IMG/VR virus record: IMGVR_UViG_3300024239_000011
Span: 434,001 to 498,000 of that record
Length of the DNA: 64,000 bases
Strand: one strand, 5' to 3'
In this document: positions 13,382 through 62,638 of the stretch, one piece after another
Position numbering within the stretch: the stretch's first letter is position 1
How the letters are laid out: every line of letters begins with the position of its first letter
Notes under the pieces: model-generated
The model's input: the letters and a program-made list of their open reading frames with translations, nothing else
The model's database searches: none
What the model was told of the DNA's origin: nothing
Made by a program: the position numbers and the translations under genes

Positions 13382-13411
13382 CCATACACCAGCTTGTTGC
13401 TGGTGTATTTA

Positions 13412-13602
13412 TCAGAAGAAACCCTTTGGCCACATGGAGTTCTCCATGCCGTGTTTCCGGATCGCATCCACACGGGTCATTACCTCATCGAACTCGTCGT
13501 CCGTGATGCCGAGTTTTTTGGCTTGACGCGCCGCCGAAGTGAATGCGAGGTACCACGAGTCATTGCTCGGGTGCTGGCGGATCGCCGCATGGATCACCGC
13601 CA
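13412..13602 (-). CDS. Small hypothetical protein (start uncertain)
   Basis: Protein-like C-terminal part of ORF 13412-13777; the upstream part overlaps a Cys-rich ORF. Confidence 0.35.
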
Positions 13603-13934
13603 CCAGTACCGCGATCACGGTCCCGGACGAGATACCGGAGAATGCGTTCTCGGTTGTCGTTGAAGAGGGACATGCAGCATCCGGCGCCGAAGGCAGGGTT
13701 CCAGTCGGAACCAGGGCTTTTGACGATTCGCTCATATTCACCACATCGGTAGATGTCGAATCCGTCATGACTTTCATCGATCTCTAAGTACGCGCATTGA
13801 TGCTTCGCCGCATCCCATACGCCAAAAACGCATGGACCCTTCTTACAACACATACCACTTCCGACACAAGGGGCGTAACCTTTCCACGCTCCGTGTTCAC
13901 GTAGGTGGACGATTTCGTCATTGATACGGTACAT
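13560..13934 (-). CDS. Cys-rich protein (YkgJ-like Zn/Fe-S cluster)
   Basis: PCVGSGMCCKKGPC...C.YL...RC..YE.I...GAGCC. Confidence 0.6.
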   Translation of the reverse strand: MYRINDEIVHLREHGAWKGYAPCVGSGMCCKKGPCVFGVWDAAKHQCAYLEIDESHDGFDIYRCGEYERIVKSPGSDWNPAFGAGCCMSLFNDNRERILRYLVRDRDRGTGGGDPCGDPPAPEQ

Positions 13935-14427
13935 GATCCAATCCCGCTGCGGAGCCGTCGCAGTGCATCGTCGCGGCGAGCCGTCCATCAATGTCGCGGT
14001 CGTCACCAGCTATGCCCGATGCCCTGATGCCATTCCAGCGTGTCGCCGTTTTTCATACGGATCAGCAGGTAGTGGTGGTGGTGTTTCGGCGGCTTGGCGG
14101 TCATTGATTTCATCCTGAACGAACATACACGTCGGCTCGTTCAGTTATAGTAATACATTTTTTGTCCAAAGTCAATGCGGGTACCGATGTCCTTTTTATT
14201 GCGCTGCACGGGGCGCAACGTATCTTTATACGCTCGTTGCGCATCCACCGTGAGCTATTCTTCATCCAATGGGTGAACAAATCGTATTTGCTTTATGTGT
14301 GTGACGATTACCTTGTATAGCGGTTTGTAGTTGGGATTGGAATGTATTTTGGTATGAAATGCGCACTTTACTTTAAGAGTAGTCATCAATGACAGCGATG
14401 CCCCACACCATCTGGTCACATGGGTGT

Positions 14428-14790
14428 TTATTTGTTCGCCACAAATTTGTGTCCTTTTGAACCATTACATGGCTGACACATGGTTTGCAGGTTGTTTAGG
14501 GCGTCGGAGCCGCCATGATGCCGGGGTTTGATATGATCAGCGGTCATCATTACCCATTCCCCATCACGCCAGCCGAATAGGTTCAGGGTGGCGACCGTGA
14601 GGGTCGGGGTTTGCTTGACGATGGTTTCTTGCCATTCGGTCCCGACACATCCGCACCGGACGCATACAGGACCGCTATGGGCGATGCAACGCAGGTTGAG
14701 GCTGATCTTGACCCGTGCGCCGCTGGGCAGGAAGAAATGGCTCTGCGCGGCACCAAAAGCGGTCTGAAGATTGGATAAAATCTGGTACAT
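14428..14790 (-). CDS. HNH endonuclease
   Basis: CVRCG...TADHIKPRHHGGSD...NLQTMCQPCNGSKG. Confidence 0.85.
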   Translation of the reverse strand: MYQILSNLQTAFGAAQSHFFLPSGARVKISLNLRCIAHSGPVCVRCGCVGTEWQETIVKQTPTLTVATLNLFGWRDGEWVMMTADHIKPRHHGGSDALNNLQTMCQPCNGSKGHKFVANK

Positions 14791-14807
14791 GTTCTATGCC
14801 ATAAACG

Positions 14808-14837
14808 AAAAAGGCGGGGCGTAACTGCCCCGCCTTT
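14808..14837 (-). terminator. Intrinsic terminator
   Basis: AAAAAGGCGGGGC...GCCCCGCCTTT. Confidence 0.75.
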
Positions 14838-14849
14838 ACGTTACCCCGC

Positions 14850-15758
14850 CTAGTAGCGGGTGTAGTTCAGGTTCTTAGACCACGCCGCGATCCACTGAGC
14901 GTAGCTCGGGTTGCGGGCGTACCAGTCGTTGTTGGCGAACAGCACCGAGGGAATGGCGATGGTGGTCACCGGCTGGTTGAAGAAGGCGTACTTCGGGTTC
15001 TGAAGGTTGCGGTAGAACCGGGGCGGGATCGACGCCATTTCGTAGATCGGCTGACCCCAGCGGTCACGCAGATTGAACAGGGCGGGATCGTTGATACCGA
15101 CCATTTCCAGGGTGGCGCCGTTGTCGTCCACGCGGTTCAGACCCTCGCTCTTCGGAGTGCTGACCACGAACAGGCAGTCCAGGCGGCTGCTGCCAGTGGA
15201 CTTGACGGTTTTCAGGGTGTTGGCGCTGGTCGGCTCGGAGGTGTTGTTCACCTGGGGACCGCCGTTGCGCGGGTCGAGATAGGGCAGCAGACCCATCATA
15301 ATGCGGTAGGTGACGTTACCGCCGCTGCCCTCGGGACCGATGGCGATGGTGTAGTTGCGCGCCTTCGGATTGCGGAAGTCCGAAATATTCATCAGACGAC
15401 CGACGACGCCCATTTCTTCCGCGACGTACTGGTTGCACACCAGATGACCGTATTCCTTGCCCACGGTGGCGACGGCACGAACATTCACGTCGTGACCGTT
15501 CATCACCTTGTAGTACAGGGCGGCGTCAGCCTGGGCAGGACCGGCGTCGCAGCCGCCGCGATCCATGATGGCGAGGTTGTCGAGGCTGCCATTGGTGACC
15601 AGCGGCGCCGGGGCATGGAAGTTGCCCGAAGCGAGAGCCGCCATATTCTGGTAGTAATTGCCCTTCGGCACACCACCACAGAAACGCTGGGCGTGCGCGT
15701 CATTATTGTACACGAACACCATCATGACCGACAGGACGGCCAAAATATAACGGTTCAT
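14850..15758 (-). CDS. TAXI-family (TRAP) solute-binding protein-like
   Basis: Signal peptide, GNYY, TNGSLDNL, AQADA, EYGHLV, IAIGPEGSGG. Confidence 0.7.
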   Translation of the reverse strand: MNRYILAVLSVMMVFVYNNDAHAQRFCGGVPKGNYYQNMAALASGNFHAPAPLVTNGSLDNLAIMDRGGCDAGPAQADAALYYKVMNGHDVNVRAVATVGKEYGHLVCNQYVAEEMGVVGRLMNISDFRNPKARNYTIAIGPEGSGGNVTYRIMMGLLPYLDPRNGGPQVNNTSEPTSANTLKTVKSTGSSRLDCLFVVSTPKSEGLNRVDDNGATLEMVGINDPALFNLRDRWGQPIYEMASIPPRFYRNLQNPKYAFFNQPVTTIAIPSVLFANNDWYARNPSYAQWIAAWSKNLNYTRY

Positions 15759-15894
15759 AAAAACCCCCAATCGAAGTTGTCTGGCGGACACCGTAGCGAT
15801 TTGATATTCATTTGTCAATCGGAGGCTGTAATAGGTTTGACAAATTCAGGAATGGTTTCTATGGTAGAGACATATTTTGCTCGGGGGAAAACCG

Positions 15895-16347
15895 ATGTCT
15901 TTGTTTGTTGATAATCGCCGCGCCCGCCATGAATATTTTCTCGAAGAGAAAATTGAGGCTGGAATCGTTCTTCAAGGTACGGAAGTGCGTGCTATCCGCG
16001 AAAAAGGTATGAATATCGCGGAGTCGTACATCGACGTGCGTGATGATGGGCTGTATCTGGTCAATGCCCATGTGGGTACCTGTAAGACGGTGGGTCCGTT
16101 CTTTCAACACGAGCCACGTCGTCCGCGCAAGCTCCTGTTGAGGGGGCGCGAAATTCGACGGCTGGCGCAGGAAGTTCAACGTAATGGCATGACCATTGTG
16201 CCTGTCAATGTTCATACCTCGGATCGGGGTTTGATCAAGGTGACTATTGCCCTGGCAAAGGGCAAGAAAAACTATGATAAGCGTCAGTCTGCCAAGGAAG
16301 CTGATTGGAAGCGCGACAAGGCACGGTTGATGCGCGAAAAGGGTTGA
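15895..16347 (+). CDS. smpB: SsrA-binding protein SmpB
   Basis: NRRARHEY..EEKIEAGIVLQGTEV, HEPRRPRKLLL, LAKGKKNYDKRQ. Confidence 0.95.
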   Translation: MSLFVDNRRARHEYFLEEKIEAGIVLQGTEVRAIREKGMNIAESYIDVRDDGLYLVNAHVGTCKTVGPFFQHEPRRPRKLLLRGREIRRLAQEVQRNGMTIVPVNVHTSDRGLIKVTIALAKGKKNYDKRQSAKEADWKRDKARLMREKG

Positions 16348-16388
16348 AACGAATAGCCATTGCCTTCGTCAACTGTGCCGATACGATA

Positions 16389-16643: not shown

Positions 16644-16700
16644 GGTTCCAAACCGAAATTGGGGAGACGGTAAAACCGCTCCCTATTTCTGGTACCTTAT

Positions 16701-18321: not shown

Positions 18322-19609
18322 TTATGCTTCCTTTTTAAATAGTTCCCGGAAGACAGGGAAAATTTGGTTTGCTGCTCGAATCTTGCGCATTTGGAATTTA
18401 TCCCACCGATCATTAATCGGCTTGTAGGTACGCCATAGATCGGTTTCGCTATTTCCCCAATTTTTGTATTCGTGACCCACTTCAATGAAGGCGTAATACT
18501 GGACGATTGGTAGAATTTTTTCGTTGAGCAAATTTTGGCAGTACGTATTGTCCGACGACACGTTATCGCCATCCGACGCTTGCGCGGCGTAGATGTTCCA
18601 CTGATCCAGGGGATACCGCTCGCGGATGACTTTATCCATCAATTCCAGCGAGGTGGATACCACGGTGCCGCCAGTTTCGGTGTCGTAGAAGAAGGTTTCT
18701 TCATCGACCTCCTTTGCTTCATGGGTGTGACGAATAAACACCACGTCGATACGCTGATACTGACGACGTAGGAAAAGATAGAGCAACATGAAGAACCGCT
18801 TCGCGAGGTCTTTCATGTGTTCGGTCATCGATCCCGATACGTCCATCAGACAGAACATCACCGCTTGTGTTGCCGGGAGGGGATGCTTGACATGAAGGTT
18901 GTACCGCACGTCCACCGGGTCCACAAATGGTACCGATTTCATACGACGCCGAATCGTTTGAACTTCCAAATGGAGTTCAGTCAACCGGTCGGTTTCTTCG
19001 GTAGTGCGCGGAGTTTTGGTTTCCAAGCGGAAGATTTCCGCCTCCAATTCCTTCAATTCTGCCGTCTTCGGACGGCGCAATGCAATCCGGCGACCAACCG
19101 CATTACGCATGGTCTGACGAATGTTCAAATTGCTTGGATTGCCTACGGTTGTGTAGCCACCACGTCGATACTCATATGAGATTGACTGCCGCAATTGCTT
19201 CTTGACCATATCGGGCAGTTCCAAATCCTCAAAGAAAATATCGAGGAATTCGCTGCTGTTAAGCACAAACTGAAAGTCATCCTGCCCTTCGCCGTCCGGG
19301 GAACCTTCGTTCCCTTGACCACCGCCCCGGCGGGATTTGGGGATAGTGTCGCCGGGGACATATTCCTTGTTGCCAGGAACGACGCGATCATGCCGACCAC
19401 CTTCGCCATGGACAATATGCGGCTCGCGGATGCCCTTGCTGGGGATGACAATTTTCCCCTTGGTATTGGCGATATCCTTGATATCGGTTTCGCCAATATG
19501 TTTCTTCACGGCTTCCTTGATTTGCTCTTTCGCCCGGCGAATGAAACGCTGCCGATTAACAAGGCTTTTGCCCTGCGGGTTTTTGCGGCGGTCGATAATG
19601 TCCAGCATA
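18322..19609 (-). CDS. yeaH: YeaH/YhbH (DUF444) vWA-like protein
   Basis: IIDRRKNPQGKSLVNRQRF, PGNKEY, AVMFCLMDVSGSM, ETGGTVVS, QASDGDN. Confidence 0.95.
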
Positions 19610-19891
19610 TCAAATGATCCCAATCCCAATTGTGATGGTTTTGATACCGTCGTTCTTAGCGCGGCACTGAAATTCTGCGACCAGACCACCGCGTTCTTCT
19701 CGAACAAATACCGTGTAATTGGAAATTTTGCGTTTCCACTTCAACATTTCACCCACTCGTGAAAGTCCTGCCTCAACCCCCGCCACCATTGCTAGTGATG
19801 GGGGATCGAAGCTAAAAGGCTCGACTTCTGCCCGAATTGCTTCGGTTAGGTCGAGTTCACCGATGGTGGTGGCACCGGAGAACGAGATCAC
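19610..19891 (-). CDS. Hypothetical protein
   Basis: 93 aa ORF filling the gap between the endonuclease and yeaH. Confidence 0.5.
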   Translation of the reverse strand: MISFSGATTIGELDLTEAIRAEVEPFSFDPPSLAMVAGVEAGLSRVGEMLKWKRKISNYTVFVREERGGLVAEFQCRAKNDGIKTITIGIGII

Positions 19892-19919
19892 GAGAAAAGT
19901 TCCAAACTAATATCGATCA

Positions 19920-20624
19920 TCATACACCCTTTGAAATAGTGCGCCCAGGATACCAACCTTCGCCAACCAAGTCTAACTCAGAAATATGGATTCGTTTGTT
20001 TTCGGTTCCGTTGGTTATCCATTTCCACTCACGTTTTTTCTCGGCACCTTTCTTATGACCTAACAACATTGCTTCAGTAGGTTCATTATGTCTGGCTTTT
20101 ACGGACTCCGCGATTTTCTCTCGCCATTCATCCGTCTTACCCTTGCCCTTCCGAACCTCTGACATTTTCTCCCGTACTTCATCAGGGAGGTTTTTACCGC
20201 GCCAACCTGAACCTATTCGGTGCCGCACATCATCGGCAAGGTCGTAGGTTTTACCTTTTCGCGGCGATGGGCGTCCTTTTTGTACCTTGCTTATTTTCTC
20301 TCGCGTTTCCGGTGATACGTCAGTGAGAACCGCTTGCTGAAGTATGTTATACTCTGGTTGTAATGTATCCAAGTAATGCTGTTCACGCTCAACTAATATT
20401 TTTTGATCACAGGCGGTTAATTCGGTTATTTCAAAGACAAATGCATCTTCACCATATTTGTTCCAAGCATTTTGAAGATGTTTATTGTGATGTTTACCTT
20501 TACGTAGTTCGCAGCGGTGTTCGGAAAATCGTCGTGTTATATCTTTACTTGAGCCGACATACCGTTTTCCGTTCTTTGTATTCCTAATCTGGTAAACACC
20601 TGATCGTTTTATATGCTGTGCCAT
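19920..20624 (-). mobile_element. Free-standing GIY-YIG homing endonuclease with NUMOD3 repeats
   Basis: SGVYQIRN...YVGSS, REQHYLD, ETREKIS/EVREKMS repeats; AT-rich insert within the prkA operon. Confidence 0.9.
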
Positions 20625-20749
20625 CTAGTCCCCGATGATAAACAGGTTATTACACCTATTTATCATCGGAGTTAAATGGAGTACGCGAATGCCCTTTTAT
20701 GCACACGCATATACCATTCTACTAAATGGTGAGATTGGTCGGAGTACGA

Positions 20750-22693
20750 TCAACCCGCCCGACGAACGCGCATGTACCATTCCACGAGACGGCGCACTTG
20801 GCGTTCGGTGTAGCCCTGCTCCACCATCCGGTTAAGGAAGTCGTGGTGTTTCTTCTCGGTGTCCTTGTCCTTCTTGGCACCGAACGAGATCACCGGCAGC
20901 AAATCTTCGGTGGCGCTGAACATGCGCTTTTCGATGACTTCCTTCATTTTCTCGTAGGAAGTCCACTTGGGCATTTTCCCGGCGTTGTTCGCTTTGTTGC
21001 AAAGCACCCACTGGACGATTTCCTGACGGAAATCCTTGGGATTGGCGATGCCGCACGACTTCTCGATTTTCGACAGTTCAGTGTCGAGAACCGTCATGCT
21101 GAACATCTGACCGGTATCCGGGTCTTTATAATCCACGCCCTGACACCACGCATCCGCATAAGACACGTAACGCTCGAAGATGTTCTGACCGTATTCTGAA
21201 TAGCTGTCCAGATAAGCTTTCTGAAGGGTCTTTTCCAGATGCTCGGCATACTTGGGCGCCAGGAACTCCTTGATGAATTCAATGAGTTGCTGTTCTTTTT
21301 CCTCCGGGAACTGCTCGCGTTTGATTTCCTGTTCCAGCACATACATCAGATGCACGGGATCAGCCGCAACTTCGTTCGGGTCGAAGTTGAAGACTTTGGA
21401 CAGGATTTTGAACGCGAAGCGGGTGGAGATGCCCTCCATACCCTCGTTGACGCCCGCGACATCACGATACTCTTGCATCGTCTTTGCCTTGGGGTCAACG
21501 TCCTTCAGACCTTCGCCGTTGTAGACGCGCATTTTTGAGAACAAGTTCGAGTTCTCGTGCTCCTTCAGACGCGACAGCACGCTGAATTGAGCCAGGATAT
21601 CGAGGGTTTGCGGAGCGCACGGCGATTTTCCGAGGCTACCACCATCCAGCATTTTGCGATAGATGTCCACTTCCTCGTCATAGCGCAGGCAATAGGGTAC
21701 CTTGATGACGCAGATACGGTCCAAGAACGCTTCGTTGTTCTTGTTATTGCGGAAAGTTTGCCACTCGGATTCGTTCGAGTGGGCGAGAATGATACCGTTG
21801 AACGGGATCGCGCCCAGTGACTCGGTACCGATGTAGTTGCCTTCCTGCGTGGCGGTCAGCAGCGGATGCAGCACCTTGATGGGCGCCTTGAACATTTCCA
21901 CGAATTCCATCACGCCCTGGTTTGCACGGCACAGAGCGCCGCTGAACGAGTAGCAGTCCGGGTCATTCTGGCTGTAGTGTTCCAGCTTGCGGATGTCCAC
22001 CTTGCCAACTAGGGCGGAAATGTCCTGATTGTTCTCGTCGCCCGGTTCGGTTTTGCAGATCGCAACCTGCTTAAGACGGCTCGGGATCATCTTGACGACT
22101 TTGAATTTGGAATAGTCGCCACCGACTTCCCCCAGCCGCTTGACTGCCCATGGGGAGGTCAGACCGGTGATGTAGCGGGTCGGAATGTTGTATTCCGCTT
22201 CAATTTCGTCTGCCAACGCCACCGGGAATAGGTTCAGGGGCGATTCGAAAACCGGTGACAGTTCGGAACGTTTACCGTCATCGAATTTCAGCACGTAGAT
22301 CGGGTGCTTTTCCATCAGCGCCTTCAGGCGCTCAGCCAGCGAGGACTTACCACCGCCGACCGGACCAAGCAGGTAGAGAACCTGCTTGCGTTCTTCAAGA
22401 CCCTGCGCGGCGTGGCGGAAATAACCAACGATGCGTTCCACGGTTTCTTCCATACCGAAGAAATCCGCAAAAGCCGGATACCGCTTAATCGTGCGATTCA
22501 TGAAGATACGCGACAAACGCGGATCGGTGCTGGTATCAATAACTTCCGGTTCACCAATTGCCTTAACCATGCGTTCTGACGCAGAGGCATACATCAACGG
22601 GTCGGAGGCGCACTGTTGAAGGTATTCCTCCAAAGACATTTCCTCTTCGTGATCCCGTTGGAATGTCGCCTGGAACTTACTCAAAATCGACAT
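20750..22693 (-). CDS. prkA: PrkA/YeaG family AAA+ serine kinase
   Basis: LLGPVGGGKSSLAE, EPGDENNQDIS, FVEMFKAPIKVLHPLLTATQE, AHSNESEW. Confidence 0.96.
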   Translation of the reverse strand: MSILSKFQATFQRDHEEEMSLEEYLQQCASDPLMYASASERMVKAIGEPEVIDTSTDPRLSRIFMNRTIKRYPAFADFFGMEETVERIVGYFRHAAQGLEERKQVLYLLGPVGGGKSSLAERLKALMEKHPIYVLKFDDGKRSELSPVFESPLNLFPVALADEIEAEYNIPTRYITGLTSPWAVKRLGEVGGDYSKFKVVKMIPSRLKQVAICKTEPGDENNQDISALVGKVDIRKLEHYSQNDPDCYSFSGALCRANQGVMEFVEMFKAPIKVLHPLLTATQEGNYIGTESLGAIPFNGIILAHSNESEWQTFRNNKNNEAFLDRICVIKVPYCLRYDEEVDIYRKMLDGGSLGKSPCAPQTLDILAQFSVLSRLKEHENSNLFSKMRVYNGEGLKDVDPKAKTMQEYRDVAGVNEGMEGISTRFAFKILSKVFNFDPNEVAADPVHLMYVLEQEIKREQFPEEKEQQLIEFIKEFLAPKYAEHLEKTLQKAYLDSYSEYGQNIFERYVSYADAWCQGVDYKDPDTGQMFSMTVLDTELSKIEKSCGIANPKDFRQEIVQWVLCNKANNAGKMPKWTSYEKMKEVIEKRMFSATEDLLPVISFGAKKDKDTEKKHHDFLNRMVEQGYTERQVRRLVEWYMRVRRAG

Positions 22694-23919: not shown

Positions 23920-23941
23920 AAGGCGGGATTTCTCCCGCCTT
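23920..23941. terminator. Terminator between convergent genes
   Basis: AAGGCGGGA...TCCCGCCTT. Confidence 0.7.
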
Positions 23942-24416
23942 ATTTTTTGAGCCAAACTTGATCAGGGCGGAAGATGATGTATTCAGCTATATTGTATGAA
24001 TCGCCATCAAACACCACACCATCGTGAACCGACCGATCTACCATTTTCATTGCTTCACGCTTGGCATTTCCAAACGTCATCCCCTTACGCCGGAATTTTT
24101 TGATCAGCGGTGTGATGTTGAGCGGGTTCTGAATTTTCAGGTACGCCGATATAAGACGCTTACGCGGTCCTGATCCCCGGCGTGCAAAACTATAGGCATA
24201 CTCTGGGGATGGAGAGAAGTAAGTTCCCTCAATATCATCATTTCGATGTACCGGCGCCGCTTTGGTATCGAACGTATCAAAATCATGAGAAGTCCCATGG
24301 TAAACCAGAAGCGGTTTGCCAGTTTTCTTATCGACCACCACGCTGTTCCCAAACCATTGGGAGAACTGCGGATCGGTTGCGACTTCATCTTCTAAAAGGA
24401 TTTCGGAAAGGCGCAT
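23940..24416 (-). CDS. ADP-ribosyltransferase-like protein (ART-PolyVal type)
   Basis: MRLSEILLE; FSQWFGNSVVVD...PLLVYHGT, GTYFSPSPEYA, AYLKIQNPL, DGVV, EYIIFRPDQV. Confidence 0.78.
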   Translation of the reverse strand: MRLSEILLEDEVATDPQFSQWFGNSVVVDKKTGKPLLVYHGTSHDFDTFDTKAAPVHRNDDIEGTYFSPSPEYAYSFARRGSGPRKRLISAYLKIQNPLNITPLIKKFRRKGMTFGNAKREAMKMVDRSVHDGVVFDGDSYNIAEYIIFRPDQVWLKK

Positions 24417-24458
24417 TAATACCTCGCTACGACACGAGGTATTTAGGTAGCCACGAAC

Positions 24459-24490
24459 AAAAAAGGCGCTGGTGAAACCAGCGCCTTCTT
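24459..24490 (-). terminator. Terminator of the ancestral DUF932 gene
   Basis: AAAAAAGGCGCTGGT...ACCAGCGCCTT. Confidence 0.7.
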
Positions 24491-24504
24491 GGATGTGACG
24501 TTGA

Positions 24505-24639
24505 TTACGCCGCCATTTCCAGCGCCACCTTCATGGCGTGGTCCTTGATGGTCAGACCGCGCCCAACGGTGTTGTTGAACATGCGGGTTTCGTCATTTGA
24601 ACCCGCGACATGATCCATGAAATAAGTTACAGGATTGAA
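24505..24639 (-). pseudogene. Orphaned 3' end of the DUF932 gene
   Basis: Translates FNPVTYFMDHVAGSNDETRMFNNTVGRGLTIKDHAMKVALEMAA*, homologous to the C terminus of 25590-26684. Confidence 0.85.
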
Positions 24640-24673: not shown

Positions 24674-25567
24674 ATGTTTACAGCCGTAGATAGAACTCCA
24701 TATACATATCATATTTGTTGGACTAATTATGATGTTCATTACTATGGAATACGATGGGCCAAAGGATGTAGTCCACAAGAACTTTGGTCAAAATACTTTA
24801 CATCGTCTTCGAGCGTGCATAATTTTAGAGCAATTTATGGTGATCCTGATGTTGTTGAGGTGCGTCGAATTTTCGATGATATTACAAAAGCCCGTTTATG
24901 GGAGAATACTGTTCTGCGACGCCTGAAGGTCATCTACCGTGATAAATGGCTGAATAAAACTGACAACATATCTATTGCGCCAGAATGTTGCCGAAGTGCG
25001 TTTGGTAAACCTGCTCTTAATCGAGATACTTCAATCTACCGTTTTTTCCATCCCGAATATGGTCAGCGCGAATATACACGCCATCAATGGATGGTAGAGT
25101 TCCCCTCCTTAAATTCGACCACCGTTTGTATGTTGATACGGGGGCGAGTAAAACAACATCAGGATTGGGTTCTGGGCACCGATGAAGATTATCTTCGTGT
25201 AATGGCGGAAACGCATCAAAGTCGTAGCGCGGCTGCATCAACCCGTATACGTACTAATGAAAGTAATCGGAAACGAAGTGCTACACTAAAAGGTCGGTTA
25301 ATAACCGAAGAACATGCGCAAAAAATAAGTCAATCAAAACGTGGGATAAGGCAAAGTGATAAGACACGTATGAAGTTAAGAGATAAAAAACGCCAAGATA
25401 GTAGAATCTTTAAATTCTACTGTGATGGTCGTGAAATTTTTCATGGTACAAAATATGAATTTTTCGATCAATTCAAAAATGATTATGATTTGAAAAAAGG
25501 TGGTTTTAATTATCTTATCGCAGGGATTTGGTTGACATATAAAGGAATAACAAGCGAAGTGGTCTAG
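24674..25567 (+). mobile_element. Free-standing Seg-like (GIY-YIG variant) homing endonuclease
   Basis: PYTY....YYGIR...YFTSS, WE..VL, WLN; NUMOD3-like EEHAQKIS/KTRMKL; AT-rich. Confidence 0.8.
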
Positions 25568-25580
25568 ACCACTTCGCTTG
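25551..25580. terminator. 30 bp perfect palindrome between convergent genes
   Basis: CAAGCGAAGTGGTCTAGACCACTTCGCTTG. Confidence 0.6.
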
Positions 25581-25589
25581 TTATTGGTG

Positions 25590-26684: not shown

Positions 26685-26844
26685 GATGTCCTCCTAAATT
26701 ACGTCACCAAATTTATCGTGACGCGCCTAGATTGTCAACCCATCATTTTCGTTGCCAAATTTAGACGTGTTTAACAGACAATCATCCCAAATAGCAAAGC
26801 ATAAATACCTCTAACGGCATGGTTACCTTAGAGGTTCTTTAGTC

Positions 26845-27015
26845 ATGATAGATAAAGCTGACAAGCTTGAGCAGCTTTTCGCGAGCAAAACCAAAGAGAA
26901 GGAAATCCGCGAAAAGAACCCAATAGTTAAGCAGGCGTGGGAACGCTACCAAGAGGTACTTGAGCTTTACATGAAAGCTGATACCCCTCGGCGCGCAAAG
27001 GAAGCCACTGCGTAA
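26845..27015 (+). CDS. Small hypothetical protein (56 aa)
   Basis: MIDKADKLE...REKNPIVKQAWERYQ; preceded by TAAATA and a GAGG SD. Confidence 0.65.
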   Translation: MIDKADKLEQLFASKTKEKEIREKNPIVKQAWERYQEVLELYMKADTPRRAKEATA

Positions 27016-33411: not shown

Positions 33412-33909
33412 GTGATGAGGTTGATTGAGGTGCTGGAAGAGAGCGCAACCGATAGCCTTCAGCGCAGAATTGCAAGTCTCGAAGCCATTATGAACGATCC
33501 TGCTGCAACAGCCGGGGAACGGGAGAATGCTCGTCTCTTGAAGGACAATTTGGAGCGGAAACGCGCATCAAGCATACCTACGGTGGAAACCGTTCTTATT
33601 CAAGTCCTTCAGAACATGAACGCTTATTGCGAACCGCCTTATTACGGGGCGCAACTTTGGGGTTTGAACTGGATACGTTTCATCGAATTTCTAACATCTG
33701 CGTTGCGTCCGTACTGCACCATCGTTGGGCGTAGTCCAACAAGTGGCGACTATTCCATCAGTATGGACTACTCCCGGCGTATAATCACAATTAGTTATAA
33801 CAGCAGTTATATGAAAGTCGCCAGCCCCCAACATTTCATTGGGAAGTTGCTATTTGCAGACCTAAAGCCAATCGTTGAACGGATGGTCGCGACGAGTAGA
33901 GCCGCTTAA
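33412..33909 (+). CDS. Hypothetical protein, putative head-internal
   Basis: MRLIEVLEE N terminus; DPAATAGERENA; TAAATA at 33381-33386. Confidence 0.65.
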   Translation: MMRLIEVLEESATDSLQRRIASLEAIMNDPAATAGERENARLLKDNLERKRASSIPTVETVLIQVLQNMNAYCEPPYYGAQLWGLNWIRFIEFLTSALRPYCTIVGRSPTSGDYSISMDYSRRIITISYNSSYMKVASPQHFIGKLLFADLKPIVERMVATSRAA

Positions 33910-34673: not shown

Positions 34674-35249
34674 TTATAGGTTTAGGTCTAATTGGTCATC
34701 GCCTTGGGCGGGTTGACTATCTGGGTTATCCGCGCCGCCCTGGGCATCGGTATCGGCATTGTTAAGACCCATGTCCAAACCTTCATCTTCGGCGGATTCA
34801 ACATCTTCAATTTCCACCTCGTCATCATACATTTCGATGGATTGATCAATAATTTCATCAATAAAACGGCGTGGTATTCGCATACTCACTAGCCAAATTT
34901 TGGTATGTTCCAATTTTGGTTTACGGGTGCCATCGCGGAAGTCGTTGGGTGTTTCTACTTTGATTGGATTAAGTTCAGTGCTTTCTTTAAAAGAAACTCG
35001 CACGTCATGCTCGACCAACCGCATCCCTCCTTTTGGATCAGGCATCTTGCTGTAAGGATATTTGAGAGTCATTTCACACCAATACCGACTAACCACCGGA
35101 CCTTCGACTACCTCGCCATCTATCCAATTCTTAAAGGCATACAGGTCGAGGCTGTCGAGGAAGTCTTCCATCTCAATAAGGATATCAAGCAAGCTTTCAT
35201 TCTCGTTTAAACGCTTGATCACTTCTGCGGGGTTCAGTTCTCTCGGCAT
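34674..35249 (-). CDS. Hypothetical phage protein
   Basis: LYAFKNW..GEVVEGP...RYW...MPDPKGG.RL; acidic tail; late motif upstream. Confidence 0.75.
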   Translation of the reverse strand: MPRELNPAEVIKRLNENESLLDILIEMEDFLDSLDLYAFKNWIDGEVVEGPVVSRYWCEMTLKYPYSKMPDPKGGMRLVEHDVRVSFKESTELNPIKVETPNDFRDGTRKPKLEHTKIWLVSMRIPRRFIDEIIDQSIEMYDDEVEIEDVESAEDEGLDMGLNNADTDAQGGADNPDSQPAQGDDQLDLNL

Positions 35250-35429
35250 TGGAAATCCTCGGTTTTCATGCCTTCATCCATAGGCACCGAGGTATTTATC
35301 ATCGCTCTTCGAAAAAATTTTGAAAATAGTGTTGACAACCTGAAGCTGGGTAAGTAAATTGATCTTCAGACGGGGAGCCGAACCCAGTCGAAGACAACAG
35401 ATCGGCACATGGACTACGGAGAACAAAAT

Positions 35430-36394: not shown

Positions 36395-37135
36395 TTATTC
36401 TTCGCCGTAGAGTTCGAGGACTTCTTTCACCACTGGGTGACGCTTCACATCTTCGCGGCTGAATTCCACCACCGTGATGTGGCTGGATTTCTTGATGCGA
36501 CCCAGGAAATCCTTCAGACCGTTGGCTTCGTAACCACGGTCGTGCTGCTGAAGGTCGCCAGTAATGAAAATGCGGCTACCATCACCGATACGAGTTAGGA
36601 TCATCTTGGTCTGTGACGGAGTGGAGTTCTGCATTTCGTCAGCGATGACGTAGGCGTTCTTGAAGGTACGCCCGCGCATATAAGCGAGCGGGGCGATTTC
36701 AAGGATTCCTTCTTGGAGCATGTTGGCGATCTCTTTAACCGAGTAATGCTCCTTGAACACGTCCAGAATGGGCAGAACCCATGGTTCCATTTTCTGGTTG
36801 ATGTCACCGGGCAGGAAGCCATGTTGCTCGTCGGTTGAAACCGCCGGGCGAGTAATCACGATTCTTTCAATTTTTCCCTCTTGGAGGTCTTGAATTGCCT
36901 TCATGGTTGCCAAGAGCGTCTTACCACAGCCCGCAGGACCAACCGCTGCGACGATGTACATTTCATCATCGTCCAGTGCGAGGACATATTCTTCTTGGTT
37001 GATGGAACGGGGAACTATTTCGATGCGTTTCTTGCGCTGGTGCGGACGGTAATTATCGAGATCAATAAGCGTGGCAGTGGGCTGGTAGTCTGTAGCGAGT
37101 TTGCGATTAACTCGACGCTGCTGCTTTTTAGCCAA
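36395..37135 (-). CDS. phoH: PhoH family ATPase
   Basis: GPAGCGKT, ITRPAV, GFLPGD, LAYMRGRTF, ADEMQN, TGDLQQHD. Probable TTG start at 37135 after GGAGG. Confidence 0.95.
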   Translation of the reverse strand: MAKKQQRRVNRKLATDYQPTATLIDLDNYRPHQRKKRIEIVPRSINQEEYVLALDDDEMYIVAAVGPAGCGKTLLATMKAIQDLQEGKIERIVITRPAVSTDEQHGFLPGDINQKMEPWVLPILDVFKEHYSVKEIANMLQEGILEIAPLAYMRGRTFKNAYVIADEMQNSTPSQTKMILTRIGDGSRIFITGDLQQHDRGYEANGLKDFLGRIKKSSHITVVEFSREDVKRHPVVKEVLELYGEE

Positions 37136-37267
37136 TGGAAACCTCCGTAATAGGGCACCCGACACCGCGTGGGTGCAAAAGTATTTACGGAGGCAGAAAT
37201 GATTAAGAGTGGTGTTTTATCCATACTGCGTGCGCAGCTAAATACTCTACTGTTGACGTGTGATCTG

Positions 37268-40167: not shown

Positions 40168-40234
40168 TGTTCACCTTCTATGTTATTTTTACTTCGCTAA
40201 ATACCACCGCTTCATGAATAATAGGTGGTGTTAA

Positions 40235-40786
40235 ATGGGAAAGAGGTCTGATTTTGAACGAGTTGAACGCGATTTCTATCCAAGCCCCTATGCTGCTGTT
40301 ATCCCGTTATTTCCGCACCTTGCTGCCGGTACTCACTTTGACGAGCCGTGTTGCGGCGATGGGGCACTAATCAAGCATCTTGAAAAGAACGGGCACGTTT
40401 GTTCGTTTTTCTCGGACATCGAGCCACAAATCGACGCGCCGCGCCTGGATGTATTTTCGCTGACCGAATGTCGCGGCGATGTGTTCATTACCAATCCCCC
40501 ATGGGATCGCAAAATTCTTCACCCTCTCATCGATCACCTGACCAATTTGGCCCCAACTTGGCTCTTGTTTGATGCGGATTGGGCACATACCGTTCAGTCT
40601 GGTCCCTACATGCAATATTGCCGTAAGATCGTAAGTATCGGTCGCGTCAAGTGGATTGAAGACTCAAAGATGACCGGAAAGGATAATGCCTGTTGGTACC
40701 TCTTCGATAAGAAAGCAGACGGACCAACTGTGTTTTACGGTCGAAAAACCGACCAGTCCTTGAATTCAGCGTTGTTTCAGTTTTGA
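40235..40786 (+). CDS. Amino-DNA methyltransferase (probably N6-adenine)
   Basis: DFYPSP, EPCCGDG (motif I), ITNPPW (motif IV). Confidence 0.85.
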   Translation: MGKRSDFERVERDFYPSPYAAVIPLFPHLAAGTHFDEPCCGDGALIKHLEKNGHVCSFFSDIEPQIDAPRLDVFSLTECRGDVFITNPPWDRKILHPLIDHLTNLAPTWLLFDADWAHTVQSGPYMQYCRKIVSIGRVKWIEDSKMTGKDNACWYLFDKKADGPTVFYGRKTDQSLNSALFQF

Positions 40787-41763
40787 TAGCGCCACCCATA
40801 GCCTCCGGTGGATTTGCGTTTGCCTTTGCATACTGCGGCGATGTTCGCTCCATTGAGCATGTTCATCGCCGCTGCCGCCGACGCAATGCATTCAAAGGAT
40901 TCTAGAACTTCGCCGGTCACCAAATCAATTTTCTCCACCGGGCGCATCTGATCGCGGTTTCCTTCACGGATTCGCTGTTTGTGATCGTCAGACAATTGGC
41001 GGGCATCTTTAGTTGGTTCGGTGACATATCGCCAGCCGAAACCTCCGTGAGTCTTAGATGGTCCCCCTTTGCACACTCGACTAATGCTTGCTGCTTGCAA
41101 ATCTAACGTTTTTGCTGCCTCGCTAATCGACTGAAATACCCGAATAAGCGTTCTATAGTCCGGGGTAAATTGTTGAACAGCAAGCCATTGATGGGAATTT
41201 GCAAGCCTTCTCTTTTCAACCACGTCTTGCGGTTGTTTCTTTCCCCAACGATGACTTTCTTGCCCTCGTTTATGGGGGTTATTTTGCTTCCAAAACTCAG
41301 ACCGAGTTTCTTTTTGTTCATCCGACATTTGCTTACCAAACATTGGGTTTTTGTCCCCAAGTTTCGCTTGGCGAATGTGGTCGGCGTGCGTGTCAGATTT
41401 TTTCTTCCCTTTAAGGGATTTGCTGAGATTTTGACGGTGTAGGGCGGTGGCAATGTACCCATAGGTACCTTCACCACCGTCCGTCATATTCATCCCGATA
41501 CCAGTTGGATACCGAACCATGTTGGTTTGGTATTCTTCTATAAGCATGATCTCTTTCATCATTGCTTCTTCTGGCGACCCATACGAGGCAACTTCGACCA
41601 TGACAAAGTTCTCTCTGCCGTATTTCTGGATGCAATTTTGGAGATAGCAGTTTTTCTTGTCACCACGACAGTGACGTTCAAACCGCTTCTCCAAAGGTTG
41701 CCGTGTCCAGCCAAAGTATACTTTGCCGGTTATTGTGCATGTGATCTTGTAGACTGTGTTCAT
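40777..41763 (-). mobile_element. Free-standing GIY-YIG homing endonuclease (NUMOD3 plus two NUMOD1)
   Basis: VYKITC...VYFG.T, GMNMTDGGEG, KNPMFGK; two F.SI.EAA...I..VCKG....GG.GWRY repeats. Confidence 0.9.
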
Positions 41764-41811
41764 AGTGATGTCTCTGACTTTGGTTACTCCATCACTATTT
41801 ATAAAACAGCC

Positions 41812-58019: not shown

Positions 58020-58037
58020 TATTCACCATCCACGTAT

Positions 58038-59108: not shown

Positions 59109-59119
59109 GTATTCACCAC

Positions 59120-60916: not shown

Positions 60917-60976
60917 ATTCCCGCCCTCGTGCTGTTCTGAATATTTATCCAGAGAGAGGGTTGCCTAAATACTGGC

Positions 60977-61495
60977 ATGAAGATGATCGAGCTATTCGAG
61001 TATACAGTTGATGGTTTCGTGATCCAAAATAGCGCGAGCATGATCACACCGGCTGGTGAAGTCATACCGTGTGATTTCGCTGGGCACAGTGATACCGTGG
61101 TACATTGGATGGAAGTTAATGATCCAGACACTCTAGCACAGTGGATCAACGATGGGATTGTTGGCTGGACTGCCGTTAATGGGCACAAAACTGTAAGTGA
61201 TGAGCAAAAAGTGATGGAAGCAGCCATTCTACATGGGTGGGTACGGTATTACTTTAGCGGCAAGGTCAATGATTGGGACGAATTTATTCTTCGTTATGTC
61301 AGAAATGCTCGTTATCTGGTAGGTTTTACATGTTCCCCCTCCCACCTCAATGGGAATACTGCTACTGCTTGCTTTCGATTATTAACAAATTTGCAGAAGA
61401 TGCAGCCGATTGCAGTGGAATTGGGCGGATATACAGAGTCGTCATATTCGGTGGTACCGTACCGGAAGGCGGTGGAATTCTTCCGATCAATATGA
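60977..61495 (+). CDS. Hypothetical 'GWVR' family protein, putative head-internal
   Basis: MKMIELFE; ITPAGE...H...AILHGWVR; TAAATA shortly before the ATG. Confidence 0.7.
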   Translation: MKMIELFEYTVDGFVIQNSASMITPAGEVIPCDFAGHSDTVVHWMEVNDPDTLAQWINDGIVGWTAVNGHKTVSDEQKVMEAAILHGWVRYYFSGKVNDWDEFILRYVRNARYLVGFTCSPSHLNGNTATACFRLLTNLQKMQPIAVELGGYTESSYSVVPYRKAVEFFRSI

Positions 61496-61561
61496 CTTTT
61501 ATGCGGTTATAAATACCTCCACACACAGGGAGTAATTCCACACACATCACCGGAGGTAATT

Positions 61562-62566
61562 ATGACGGATAACCCGTTTTCGATTCGTTTTTCCTGTCTT
61601 GAACTTGCTCTAAAGTCGTCCATCGACCCAGAGAATGTGCTTCTCACCGCCACCAAATACTACAATTTCGTCAATGGTGATTTTACTTCCATTCCTGAAT
61701 TGTCAGACAAAGTGAAGTTAGTTCAGCGCGAAAACTCTCCCAACCTTTCCAAGGTGTCGGTCCAAATCCGTGACACTGGTTACGAAACCACAGTGCTTGA
61801 GCGTATTCGCAAGGCACCGGAGCGCAAGATTTTTGCCATCGATTTGGAAGACAAGTCTCCTGAAGACATTGTTGAAGCTCTTGAGGAATACAAATCCAAG
61901 TTCGAAACGTTGATTGAACTCAAGGCCATGAAGAAGCTTGCTGGTGTTAGCGAAGACATCGACCTAGATGCGCTCTCGCCAACAGATGATAGTCCAACCC
62001 TTTGTGAGTTTAATCGTGCAGAAGTTCTCGAAATGAAGAACCTACGCAACCTTGTTGCCGATGAGTCAACGGCGGAAAATGAAGAACTTGCCAACGCGAT
62101 CACCAAACTGAAAGCGTCGATCAATTACAAACCGAAATTTGGTGGTAAGATCACCAATCCCATCGAAACTTTGTTCCGCGCTGCTGATACCAAGATCGCT
62201 GAAGTAGCAGAAGATGGCGAAAGCATCAATGCCACCCTACAGTACGCAGTGGATAAAGCGATCAATGAAGCTGCTCGTGTATTGATCGTGGCTAAGGTAG
62301 ATCAAATCATGGTGCCAATGTCGGTTATTCTAGCACTAGATCACGCAGCATTGGGTACCAAGAGCATCAATCCGGATAATGGCATGGCAATGTTCTCGTT
62401 CTTGTCAGGTGGGTATGTGGAGATTCGTGAAAGCGTTGATCCGGAAACTGAAAATCTTGCACCGTATGATTATTTGGTTATGCGGGGGACGATGGGTAGT
62501 CAGTCACCGAAAGATTATAATGGGCGTACCATATATTTGGTACGGGATGCTTCTCCACGAGCATAA
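61562..62566 (+). CDS. Hypothetical acidic protein
   Basis: TATAAATA and GGAGG upstream; IR..CLELAL...VL.TA.KYY.FV; MKKLAG. Confidence 0.75.
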   Translation: MTDNPFSIRFSCLELALKSSIDPENVLLTATKYYNFVNGDFTSIPELSDKVKLVQRENSPNLSKVSVQIRDTGYETTVLERIRKAPERKIFAIDLEDKSPEDIVEALEEYKSKFETLIELKAMKKLAGVSEDIDLDALSPTDDSPTLCEFNRAEVLEMKNLRNLVADESTAENEELANAITKLKASINYKPKFGGKITNPIETLFRAADTKIAEVAEDGESINATLQYAVDKAINEAARVLIVAKVDQIMVPMSVILALDHAALGTKSINPDNGMAMFSFLSGGYVEIRESVDPETENLAPYDYLVMRGTMGSQSPKDYNGRTIYLVRDASPRA

Positions 62567-62572
62567 ACCAAC

Positions 62573-62594
62573 GGGGCGGGAGAACTCTCGCCCC
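62573..62594 (+). terminator. Intrinsic terminator
   Basis: GGGGCGGGAG...CTCTCGCCCC followed by TTCTTCTTT. Confidence 0.7.
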
Positions 62595-62638
62595 TTCTTC
62601 TTTCCGCTAAATACCCTGGAATCAAACCAGGGGGCAGC

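What the first reader, a model, noticed from the sequence alone, without database searches (positions are those of the whole stretch)
13384..62632. Recurrent promoter-in-hairpin architecture: TAAATA in the 5' arm, RBS in the 3' arm
Seen at about ten genes, the late motif overlaps or abuts one arm of a stem whose other arm covers the SD or start region. Sites: 13384-13393/13399-13408; 20632-20646/20655-20669 (G-U only on the coding strand); 24418-24426/24435-24443; 26807-26814/26828-26835; 35257-35263/35286-35292; 37142-37150/37185-37193 (phoH); 40200-40208/40224-40232; 41762-41770/41790-41798; 61514-61520/61552-61558; 62614-62619/62627-62632. The arm sequences differ, so the structure rather than the sequence is shared. 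Known: T4 uses this device at a few genes (e, soc, 49, I-TevI) so that early read-through RNA is not translated. Inference: here it is a systematic timing gate also applied to phoH, a DNA methylase, an ART and endonucleases.
Basis: partly seen in the sequence, partly recalled or inferred. Interest (0 to 1): 0.72.

Follow-up and report, generated by a model that had tools for sequence, protein, structure and literature searches.

The report
T4-style promoter-in-hairpin translation gates
In this 543-kb uncultured phage, about a quarter of the T4-like late promoters (TAAATA) sit in the 5' arm of a hairpin that hides the ribosome-binding site. This is the device known from T4 lysozyme, soc and homing-endonuclease genes, used here about 38 times and mostly on mobile or accessory genes.

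Summary
All ten stems exist as written, and the pattern is far above chance.

- **Setting:** The window belongs to a 543,035-bp virus record that encodes a gp55-like late sigma factor.
- **Promoter motif:** TAAATA is the top upstream motif (167 sense copies vs 14.7 expected). It lies 20-34 nt before start codons, with a purine at the sixth base after it, the predicted +1.
- **Frequency:** 38 of 137 TAAATA-led genes (27.7%) carry a strong promoter-to-RBS stem. This compares with 4.3% in promoter/RBS chimeras, 11.8% in non-TAAATA genes and 0.6-12% at non-promoter TAAATA copies. In the window it is 11 of 21.
- **Geometry:** 34 stems cover the SD or the start codon. 28 lose all but 2 bp or fewer if RNA starts at the predicted +1. 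Predicted RBS opening cost then falls from about 12 to about 5 kcal/mol.
- **Gene classes:** Gated genes match T4's classes: 9 homing endonucleases (64% of TAAATA-led ones), an endolysin, virion proteins, plus ART, PhoH and methyltransferases.

The mechanism is the known T4 one, and "systematic" overstates it, because 72% of late promoters are ungated. Relatives show 10-15%, no higher than their own non-TAAATA control genes at the main cut-off. Individual gates are evolutionarily labile. No transcription start data could be obtained.

The parts
13379..13411 (-). Gate 1. TAAATA 13406-13411; 10-bp stem 13399-13408 (5' arm on the - strand) / 13384-13393 (3' arm); ATG at 13381. Gene 12389-13381 (330 aa, no family hit).
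20622..20670 (-). Gate 2. TAAATA 20657-20662 lies inside a 15-17-bp stem (20654-20670 / 20631-20647; one G.U on the coding strand only); ATG at 20624. Gene 19920-20624 is a GIY-YIG homing endonuclease, absent from the syntenic relative L171.
24414..24445 (-). Gate 3. TAAATA 24440-24445; 10-bp stem 24434-24443 / 24418-24427 covering GAGGT; ATG at 24416. Gene 23940-24416 is an ART-PolyVal ADP-ribosyltransferase domain protein.
24458..24484 (-). Intrinsic terminator-like hairpin (GGCGCTGG-TTTCA-CCAGCGCC plus a T run) on the - strand, just upstream of gate 3 and after a 36-codon - strand ORF. It suggests that sense transcription reaches the ART gate from upstream.
26802..26847 (+). Gate 4. TAAATA 26802-26807; 8-bp stem 26807-26814 / 26828-26835 covering AGAGGT; ATG at 26845. 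Gene 26845-27015 (56 aa, unknown).
35247..35298 (-). Gate 5. TAAATA 35293-35298; 7-bp stem 35286-35292 / 35257-35263 covering GAGG; ATG at 35249. Gene 34674-35249 is a virion structural protein (phrog_12928). The stem is identical in the 98%-identical L173 and absent in the 69% and 64% relatives, which keep TAAATA.
37133..37194 (-). Gate 6 (phoH). TAAATA 37182-37187; outer 10-bp stem 37185-37194 / 37141-37150 covering GGAGG, enclosing an inner leader hairpin; TTG start at 37135. The outer stem is conserved in L171 with one G-C to G.U change.
40198..40237 (+). Gate 7. TAAATA 40198-40203; 9-bp stem 40200-40208 / 40224-40232 (one G.U); ATG at 40235. Gene 40235-40786 is DNA-methyltransferase-like (phrog_799), in a G000-specific insertion.
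41761..41803 (-). Gate 8. TATAAATA 41796-41803; 9-bp stem 41790-41798 / 41762-41770 covering the ATG (41763). Gene 40777-41763 is a GIY-YIG/NUMOD homing endonuclease, in a G000-specific insertion.
61508..61564 (+). Gate 9. TATAAATA 61508-61515; 7-bp stem 61514-61520 / 61552-61558 covering GGAGG; ATG at 61562. Gene 61562-62566 (334 aa, unknown).
62608..62641 (+). Gate 10. TAAATA 62608-62613; 6-bp G+C stem 62614-62619 / 62627-62632 abutting the SD; ATG at 62639. Gene 62639-63532 is a SAM-dependent methyltransferase.
4404..4463 (+). TAAATA 4408-4413; 8-bp stem 4404-4411 / 4444-4451. The stem arises from two overlapping opposite-strand TAAATA boxes (the - strand box is 4430-4435). Gene 4461-5450 (phrog_11975, unknown).

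Best explanation
These are T4-type translational timing gates.

**Shown**
- TAAATA, usually preceded by A or C, is the dominant upstream motif of a giant phage that encodes a gp55-family late sigma factor.
- At about 38 genes, the DNA from roughly base 2 of the box to about 6 nt past it also encodes the 5' arm of a hairpin. The 3' arm of that hairpin is the Shine-Dalgarno sequence or the start codon.

**Inferred**
- RNA polymerase with the late sigma starts about 6 nt after the box, at the conserved purine. Late mRNA therefore lacks the 5' arm and has an open ribosome-binding site.
- Any longer RNA that enters from upstream (early or middle read-through, or leaky termination) contains both arms, folds, and is poorly translated.
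- The result is that the gene is translated only from its own late promoter, whatever transcription unit it sits in.

**Where it is used**
The device is concentrated on homing endonucleases and other lineage-specific accessory genes (ART, methyltransferases, PhoH). It also occurs on an endolysin and some virion genes. It behaves like an insulation module on inserted genes, not like a genome-wide rule.
For: **Late-promoter identity**
- gp55-like ORF at G000:C1:258632-259477: phrog_12791 E 4e-83, phrog_234 E 1e-20. It is 47% identical to the PA5oct sigma.
- TAAATA occurs 167 times sense-oriented in -80..-8 versus 14.7 expected.
- The spacing to the start codon peaks at 20-34 nt.
- Index 11 is purine in 79% of sites and C in 6%. 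This matches the T4 geometry of a TATA box about one helical turn upstream of +1 (PMC2988020).

**Stems**
- 27.7% of TAAATA-led genes, versus 4.3% in chimeras and 11.8% / 7.6% in control genes.
- The start-codon-independent test gives p 5e-7.
- MFE is -10.8 kcal/mol for native sites versus -8.1 for chimeras.

**Geometry**
- 5' arm ends peak at index 11-12.
- 26 stems cover the SD, 8 cover the start codon, and 28 keep 2 bp or fewer after the predicted +1.

**Energetics**
- The RBS opening energy in long RNA minus late RNA is 3.99 kcal/mol, versus 1.91 in controls (p 1.5e-6).
- In the gated subset it falls from 11.9 to 5.3 kcal/mol as the 5' end moves from -10 to +11.

**Gene classes**
- 9 of 14 TAAATA-led homing endonucleases are gated, versus 29 of 123 other TAAATA-led genes (OR 5.8, p 0.003).
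- An endolysin is gated, paralleling T4 gene e.
- T4 soc is recovered by the same pipeline as a positive control.

**Comparative**
- The phoH outer stem is kept in a relative whose PhoH is 75% identical, with a G-C to G.U change that is tolerated only in sense RNA.
- A terminator plus a gate precedes the ART gene.

**Literature**
- The same device is documented for T4 e, soc, 49, I-TevI/II/III, segB and Aeh1 mobE (PMC3014915, PMC2988022).
Against: - No TSS or expression data. The public RNA runs hold only a few read-sized contigs.
- The +1 position is inferred from T4 and from a purine peak.
- Stems are as common where the called upstream neighbour is divergent (27%) as where it is co-directional (29%). 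A source of read-through RNA is therefore not evident for half the cases. At least one 'divergent' call hides a small sense ORF and a terminator.
- Only 2 TAAATA genes also have a sigma-70-like promoter upstream.
- Sense-strand stems are better than antisense stems 16 to 8, which is not significant (p 0.15).
- No gp33 or gp45 homologues were found.
- Gated promoters have a G+C-richer segment just after the box (56% versus 45% in ungated). T4 late promoters are A+T-rich there (PMC2988020).
- 4 stems cover neither the SD nor the start codon, and 3 keep 5 bp or more after the predicted +1.
- The relatives G001 and G002 show no excess over their own control genes at the main cut-off.
Confidence: 0.72

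Rival explanations
1. The hairpins are RNA elements with another role. Candidates are 3'-end or stabilising hairpins of upstream transcripts, processing sites, or 5' stabilisers of the late mRNA. On this view the overlap with the promoter and the RBS simply follows from very short leaders.
For: - Leaders are only 20-34 nt long, so any leader hairpin must lie near both elements.
- A few stems sit wholly or largely downstream of the predicted +1 and leave the SD free: 174250+, 372241-, 345815+.
- phoH relatives widely carry an inner leader hairpin that does not touch the SD.
- Non-TAAATA control genes also show some excess over chimeras: 11.8% versus 7.2%.
Against: - 34 of 38 stems include the SD or start codon, and 28 of 38 are destroyed by a start at index 11.
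- The excess is specific to TAAATA in promoter position.
- The stems are followed by the start codon within a few nt, not by a U tract.
- Stems of 6-17 bp are shorter than RNase III substrates (established knowledge, not tested here).
Confidence: 0.12
2. The inverted repeats act at the DNA level. They could be operators for dimeric regulators (including autorepression by the endonucleases, as with I-TevI) or extruded hairpins that modulate promoter use. On this view they do not act as RNA.
For: - The repeats overlap the promoter itself.
- I-TevI is known to bind an operator overlapping its late promoter (PMC2988022).
- 16 of 40 stems are equally good on both strands, and the sense preference is not significant.
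- Some cases are simply two overlapping opposite-strand TAAATA boxes: 22039+/22058- and W4408+/W4435-, as at T4 genes 4/53.
Against: - Arm sequences differ from gene to gene, so each would need its own binding protein.
- Loops range from 3 to 47 nt, which is unfavourable for cruciform extrusion.
- The 3' arm is consistently the SD or start codon, which a DNA operator has no reason to be.
- G.U positions are tolerated on the coding strand only at gate 2 and in the L171 phoH variant.
Confidence: 0.08
3. The stems are a by-product of composition. The promoter context TAAATA-CCTC is anti-SD-like and the spacer after GGAGG is often TATT, so promoter and RBS pair without any selection for structure.
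For: - C is favoured right after the box (41%), and TAAATACC occurs 40 times.
- By inspection of the list, about a quarter of the gated 5' arms contain CCTC or CTCC.
- Chimeras still show 4.7 cross pairs on average.
Against: - Chimeras that preserve exactly these position-specific compositions give only 4.3% strong stems, against 27.7% for native sites.
- Most arms have unrelated sequences, such as CACCAGC, GTGATG, CCCTGG, TCCACAC and CGCATGT.
Confidence: 0.03

Closest known systems
T4 RBS-sequestering hairpins relieved by an internal late promoter (genes e, soc, 49, I-TevI, I-TevII, I-TevIII, segB; mobE of Aeromonas phage Aeh1)
   Same: - A T4-type late box lies in or next to the DNA that encodes the 5' strand of a helix whose 3' strand is the SD or AUG.
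- Late RNA lacks the 5' strand; longer RNA is translationally silent (PMC3014915, PMC2988022).
- The same gene classes are involved here: homing endonucleases, lysozyme/endolysin and capsid or virion proteins.
- T4 soc scores as a gate in the same pipeline.
   Different: - About 38 instances in one genome, versus about ten described in T4.
- The phage is a 543-kb, 48% G+C member of the PA5oct/Rak2-like jumbo group, not Straboviridae. Its sigma is 282-292 aa against 185 aa for gp55, and no gp33 or gp45 homologue was detected.
- The core box is TAAATA; the full TATAAATA occurs only 33 times in the genome.
- The device also covers PhoH, ART and methyltransferases.
- None of the function has been tested experimentally here.
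ATAAATA late-promoter-like motif of Rak2-like jumbo phages (for example vB_PcaM_CBB, GAP32)
   Same: - An ATAAATA-type motif precedes structural genes.
- A gp55-like sigma is present, and gp33 and gp45 homologues are not detectable (PMC5259590). The same was found here.
   Different: No hairpin gating is mentioned in the passages of that paper that I retrieved by term search. In the two related uncultured genomes examined here, stems are no more frequent than in control genes at the main cut-off.
Generic RBS-occluding leader structures (for example the MS2 coat cistron and type I toxin mRNAs)
   Same: Translation is controlled by intramolecular pairing of the SD or start codon.
   Different: Here the relief is proposed to come from the choice of transcription start site within the 5' arm. 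It does not come from processing, ribosome standby or a trans-acting factor.

Membership tests
T4-type (gp55-dependent) late promoter | A TATAAATA-like box as the only conserved element, located upstream of late genes | tested here: met
   TAAATA is the most enriched upstream hexamer (167 vs 14.7 expected; [A/C]TAAATA[C]). It lies 20-34 nt before start codons, and no -35-like partner emerged among the top enriched k-mers. The full 8-mer is present at only 33 sites.
T4-type (gp55-dependent) late promoter | A phage-encoded gp55-family sigma factor | tested here: met
   phrog_12791 E 3.9e-83 and phrog_234 E 1.1e-20 at G000:C1:258632-259477. A direct search with T4 gp55 found nothing.
T4-type (gp55-dependent) late promoter | gp33 co-activator and gp45 sliding-clamp activator | tested here: inconclusive
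   No hit to phrog_254 (gp33), phrog_223 or the T4 gp45 sequence. The same absence is reported for Rak2-like phages (PMC5259590). These are small or divergent proteins, so absence is not proven.
T4-type (gp55-dependent) late promoter | Transcription start about one helical turn downstream of the start of the box (about 6 nt after it) | not testable with these tools
   There is only indirect support: purine 79% and C 6% at the sixth base after TAAATA. The RNA runs were uninformative.
T4-type late-promoter/RBS-hairpin translational gate | A helix sequesters the SD and/or the start codon | tested here: met
   26 of 38 stems cover 3 nt or more of the SD, 8 cover the start codon and 4 cover neither. 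All ten reader sites qualify.
T4-type late-promoter/RBS-hairpin translational gate | The late promoter is placed so that late RNA lacks the 5' strand of the helix | tested here: met
   This holds with the predicted +1 at index 11: 28 of 38 stems retain 2 bp or fewer, and 5' arm ends peak at index 11-12. RBS opening energy in the gated subset falls from 11.9 to 5.3 kcal/mol. The result depends on an inferred TSS.
T4-type late-promoter/RBS-hairpin translational gate | Longer early or middle transcripts read into the gene and are not translated | not testable with these tools
   Context is ambiguous: 19 gated genes have co-directional and 19 have divergent called neighbours. There is a sense terminator before the ART gate. 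No time-resolved RNA or ribosome data exist.
T4-type late-promoter/RBS-hairpin translational gate | Preferential use on homing endonuclease and lysis genes | tested here: met
   9 of 14 TAAATA-led homing endonuclease genes are gated, versus 29 of 123 others (p 0.003). The endolysin 229100-229666 is gated.
Intrinsic (rho-independent) terminator | A G+C-rich stem followed immediately by a U tract | tested here: not met
   The 3' arms are followed by spacer and start codon (for example ...GAGGTATT-AATG), not by T runs. True terminators in the region look different.
N4-type DNA-hairpin promoter | A short stem with a 3-nt loop lying wholly upstream of +1 (recalled from knowledge of N4 early promoters) | tested here: not met
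   Loops range from 3 to 47 nt, and the 3' arm lies downstream of the predicted +1, at the RBS.

The most novel reading that the evidence does not exclude
The promoter-in-hairpin unit may be a portable, self-insulating late-expression cassette. On this reading it travels with, or is quickly acquired by, genes newly inserted into giant-phage genomes (homing endonucleases, ART, methyltransferases), so that potentially harmful cargo is silent on any read-through RNA. Three observations would then be explained: why gates are gained and lost between relatives while the promoters persist, why they cluster in insertion-rich regions such as this window, and why their number tracks the homing-endonuclease load of the genome.
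Probability: 0.35. Interest if true: 0.55.

Novelty: new member of a known kind. Interest (0 to 1): 0.4.

Why it matters
- It extends a textbook T4 post-transcriptional device to a distant, uncultured 543-kb phage lineage.
- It gives what appears to be the first genome-scale, control-calibrated count of how often the device is used: about 22-32 stems above background in one genome.
- It provides an annotation rule. TAAATA, then an arm ending about 6 nt downstream, then an SD-complementary partner, marks genes translated only late.
- It flags lineage-specific accessory genes (ART, PhoH, methyltransferases, homing endonucleases) as strictly late-translated.
- It suggests that insulation from read-through transcription is a cost of gene insertion that such phages solve repeatedly.

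Tried and rejected
**Searches that found nothing useful**
- Megablast of 6 kb against cultured phages gave no hit.
- Direct searches of the genome with T4 gp55 and gp45 gave nothing. The gp55 homologue was found only with PHROG profiles. gp33 and gp45 profiles found nothing.
- An Rfam scan of the window gave no family.

**RNA evidence**
- The window is held by subsurface and soil DNA runs. Four wastewater RNA-type runs hold only a few 150-190-nt contigs identical to the virion gene 34674-35249. There are no 5' ends or joints, so there is no TSS evidence.

**Tests that were not decisive**
- Pair-probability meta-profile with long flanks: only a modest bump (0.41-0.46 versus 0.31-0.35 at index 6-12). 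I replaced it with the ungapped-stem statistic.
- Co-directional versus divergent upstream neighbour: no difference. The classification proved unreliable for small ORFs.
- Upstream sense terminators: 5 of 38 gated versus 5 of 99 ungated, p 0.14. The first version of the terminator scan missed stems that run into the T tract.
- Sense versus antisense stem quality: 16 versus 8, p 0.15.
- Tandem sigma-70-like plus TAAATA promoters: only 2 genes, neither gated.

**Comparators**
- T4 baseline used the first 150 kb only. It gave 17 TATAAATA-led genes and 3 strong stems: soc and the gene 4/53 overlapping pair. My crude gene calls missed e and the intron endonucleases, so the T4 fraction is only indicative.
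- Covariation via phoH relatives: most are too distant. One informative relative was found (L171). P0123 and P0124 have no outer stem.


Full report
**What the window is.**
The window is bases 434001-498000 of a 543,035-bp IMG/VR virus record with 48% G+C. It has no close relative among cultured phages. DNA runs from subsurface and soil metagenomes hold it. I laid the whole genome in the Python box and called 728 genes with a simple hexamer/SD-based caller. Start positions are therefore approximate. One key test below does not use them.

**The motif is a real, T4-like late-promoter signal.**
- TAAATA occurs 314 times on both strands, about the chance number.
- However, 167 copies lie sense-oriented in -80..-8 of called starts, against 14.7 expected. 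This makes it by far the most enriched upstream hexamer. TTGACA is also enriched, as expected for host-type early promoters.
- The distance from the box to the start codon peaks sharply at 20-34 nt.
- Among 137 promoter-position sites, the base before the box is A or C (86%) and the base after it is often C (41%).
- The sixth base after the box (index 11, counting the T of TAAATA as 0) is a purine in 79% and C in 6%. T4 late promoters are an 8-bp TATA box about one helical turn upstream of the start site (PMC2988020), which puts +1 at exactly that index.
- The genome encodes a gp55-family sigma at G000:C1:258632-259477 (phrog_12791 E 3.9e-83; phrog_234 E 1.1e-20).
- That sigma is 47% identical to those of Pseudomonas phage PA5oct and Sinorhizobium phage Phosso, and about 40% identical to Rak2/121Q-like jumbo phages.
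- gp33 and gp45 homologues were not found. The same absence is reported for the Rak2-like phage CBB, which also has an ATAAATA late motif (PMC5259590).

**The observation.**
All ten arm pairs are reverse complements at the stated coordinates. On the coding strand, TAAATA overlaps or abuts the 5' arm, and the 3' arm covers the SD or the start codon. An eleventh gate in the window (4404-4411/4444-4451) meets the same criteria.

**Is it more than chance?**
I scored, for every TAAATA-led gene, the best ungapped stem whose 5' arm overlaps box-2..box+12 and whose 3' arm overlaps start-16..start+2.
- Strong stems (score 8 or more) occur at 38 of 137 genes (27.7%).
- Chimeras that join each promoter half to another gene's RBS half give 4.3%. 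This null keeps all position-specific composition, including the anti-SD-like TAAATA-CCTC.
- Non-TAAATA genes with intergenic upstream regions give 11.8%, and all non-TAAATA genes give 7.6%.
- At the stricter cut-off the figures are 13.9% versus 1.1%, 4.6% and 2.9%.
- Fisher against control genes gives 8.6e-5. A binomial test against the chimera rate gives 2e-20.
- Mean MFE is -10.8 versus -8.1 kcal/mol.
- Without using start codons at all, TAAATA in promoter position has such a stem in 31% / 14.5% of cases. Other TAAATA copies give 11.8% / 0.6%, and shuffles give 5-7% / 0.4-1.2%.
- The excess is therefore about 22-32 stems genome-wide. The window holds 11 of its 21 TAAATA-led genes gated, against 27 of 116 elsewhere (p 0.015).

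**Geometry and energetics fit the T4 mechanism.**
- 5' arms start mostly at index 2-7 and end at index 11-12 in 16 of 38 cases, that is, at the predicted +1.
- 26 stems cover 3 nt or more of the SD, 8 cover the start codon and 4 cover neither.
- If RNA starts at index 11, 28 stems keep 2 bp or fewer, 7 keep 3-4 bp and 3 keep 5 bp or more.
- The predicted cost of opening the RBS is 9.55 kcal/mol in a long RNA and 5.56 in the late RNA. The difference is 3.99, against 1.91 for control genes with pseudo-sites (p 1.5e-6).
- In the gated subset the cost falls stepwise from 11.9 (5' end at -10) to 5.3 (5' end at index 11).

**Which genes are gated.**
- In the window: two GIY-YIG homing endonucleases, an ART-PolyVal ADP-ribosyltransferase, PhoH (TTG start), a virion structural protein, a DNA-methyltransferase-like protein, a SAM methyltransferase and unknowns.
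- Elsewhere in the genome: three HNH endonucleases, three phrog_3339 homing endonucleases (one weak hit), one weak phrog_4645 endonuclease hit, an endolysin (the counterpart of T4 gene e), a gp4-like head-closure protein, and virion or tail-fibre proteins.
- Of 19 homing-endonuclease-like genes, 14 have TAAATA (OR 13, p 2e-7). Of those 14, 9 are gated, against 29 of 123 other TAAATA-led genes (OR 5.8, p 0.003).
- These are the gene classes for which T4 is known to use the device: e, soc, 49, I-TevI/II/III, segB and Aeh1 mobE (PMC3014915, PMC2988022).

**Comparison with other genomes.**
- T4 (first 150 kb, same pipeline): 3 strong stems among 17 TATAAATA-led genes. These include soc, a positive control, and the overlapping divergent promoters of genes 4 and 53. 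Controls give about 4%.
- G001 (517 kb), an uncultured giant phage with the same sigma family and TAAATA enrichment: 14.7% versus 12.4% in its control genes.
- G002 (352 kb), likewise: 10.5% versus 11.1%, with a few very strong stems (8.8% versus 1.6% at the strict cut-off).
- G001 and G002 each have only one homing-endonuclease-like gene.
- The high frequency is therefore a property of this genome, not of the clade. Even without endonucleases the rate here is 23.6%.

**Evolution of individual gates.**
Syntenic relatives were found through the virion protein.
- A 98%-identical contig (L173) has identical hairpins.
- In the relative L171 (251.7-kb contig; virion protein 69% identical), the phoH gate is kept with one G-C to G.U change in the 3' arm (TTACGGAGG to TTATGGAGG). 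Only sense RNA tolerates that change. The virion-gene stem is absent in L171, although TAAATA is kept at the same distance.
- In the 64% relative (L174), neither gate is present, but the orthologue of gene 33421-33909 has one.
- Among 80 more distant phoH loci, 45 keep TAAATA 38-61 nt upstream. Most have only an inner leader hairpin. Only one, the phoH of G001 (L013), scores as a strong stem, and its 3' arm only abuts the SD instead of covering it.
- Promoters are therefore conserved while gates are labile.
- Five of the window's gated genes (both GIY-YIG genes, the ART, the methyltransferase-like gene and the 56-aa ORF) lie in segments absent from the L171 synteny.

**What remains unproven.**
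- No TSS or expression data exist. The RNA-type runs contain only a few read-sized contigs.
- Gated genes are equally often preceded by a divergent called neighbour. At the ART gene, however, a 36-codon sense ORF and an intrinsic terminator sit just upstream of the gate, and sigma-70-like promoters lie further upstream on the same strand.
- Upstream terminators and sense-strand preference trend the right way but are not significant.
- Gated promoters are G+C-richer just after the box, unlike T4 late promoters. This may cost promoter strength.

**Verdict.**
It applies to about a quarter of late promoters, not systematically, and it is concentrated on homing endonucleases and other inserted accessory genes. 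Rival readings are another RNA role, DNA-level operators, and composition. They are less well supported for the reasons given under each.

Noticed in passing
genome-wide; window TAAATA sites: There is a second conserved position: A in 47% and C in 9% at index 17 (12 nt after the box, predicted +7). This is in addition to the purine at index 11. It is unexplained.
   Followed up: no
window 4404-4451; also G000:C1:22039-22063: Pairs of TAAATA boxes on opposite strands overlap face to face, so the two divergent genes' promoters form a palindrome and their RNAs would overlap at the 5' ends. The genome copy at about 22 kb precedes a gp4-like head-closure gene. T4 genes 4 and 53 show the same arrangement.
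   Followed up: partly
window 24458-24617 (- strand): An unannotated 36-codon ORF is followed by a strong intrinsic terminator immediately upstream of the ART gene's promoter and hairpin. With the terminator at 25546-25585, the ART gene sits behind two terminators and a translational gate.
   Followed up: partly
window 37133-37194 and 80 phoH loci (L013-L092): phoH starts with TTG after a strong GGAGG in this phage and in many relatives. 45 of 80 related loci keep TAAATA 38-61 nt upstream, and most of those have a leader hairpin of variable sequence downstream of the predicted +1. The public gene call for this phoH (256 aa, GTG at 37165) starts inside the leader hairpin and is probably 10 codons too long.
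   Followed up: partly
window 18322-22693 (- strand): The orthologues in L171 carry the Pfam families PrkA/AAA_PrkA and DUF444, so this giant phage carries a PrkA-YeaH-like gene pair. In this genome a GIY-YIG endonuclease is inserted between them.
   Followed up: no
L174 10722-11515 (a relative whose virion protein is 64% identical): The relative encodes eIF-1a-like (PF01176) and SmpB (PF01668) proteins. These are translation-related genes typical of huge phages.
   Followed up: no
G000:C1:258632-260507: The gp55-like sigma gene is flanked by a 582-aa homing endonuclease (256841-258556). On the other side, divergently, lies a gated virion structural gene (259614-260507, phrog_12050).
   Followed up: no
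window 34674-35268: Wastewater RNA-type runs (2024-2025) contain contigs 100% identical to the virion gene. The phage or a near-identical strain therefore occurs outside the subsurface site. The identical protein is also recorded on an 869,618-bp contig, longer than this record.
   Followed up: no
G000:C1:102811-103186: An HNH endonuclease-like reading frame is interrupted by a TAA stop. It is probably a decayed homing endonuclease gene.
   Followed up: no
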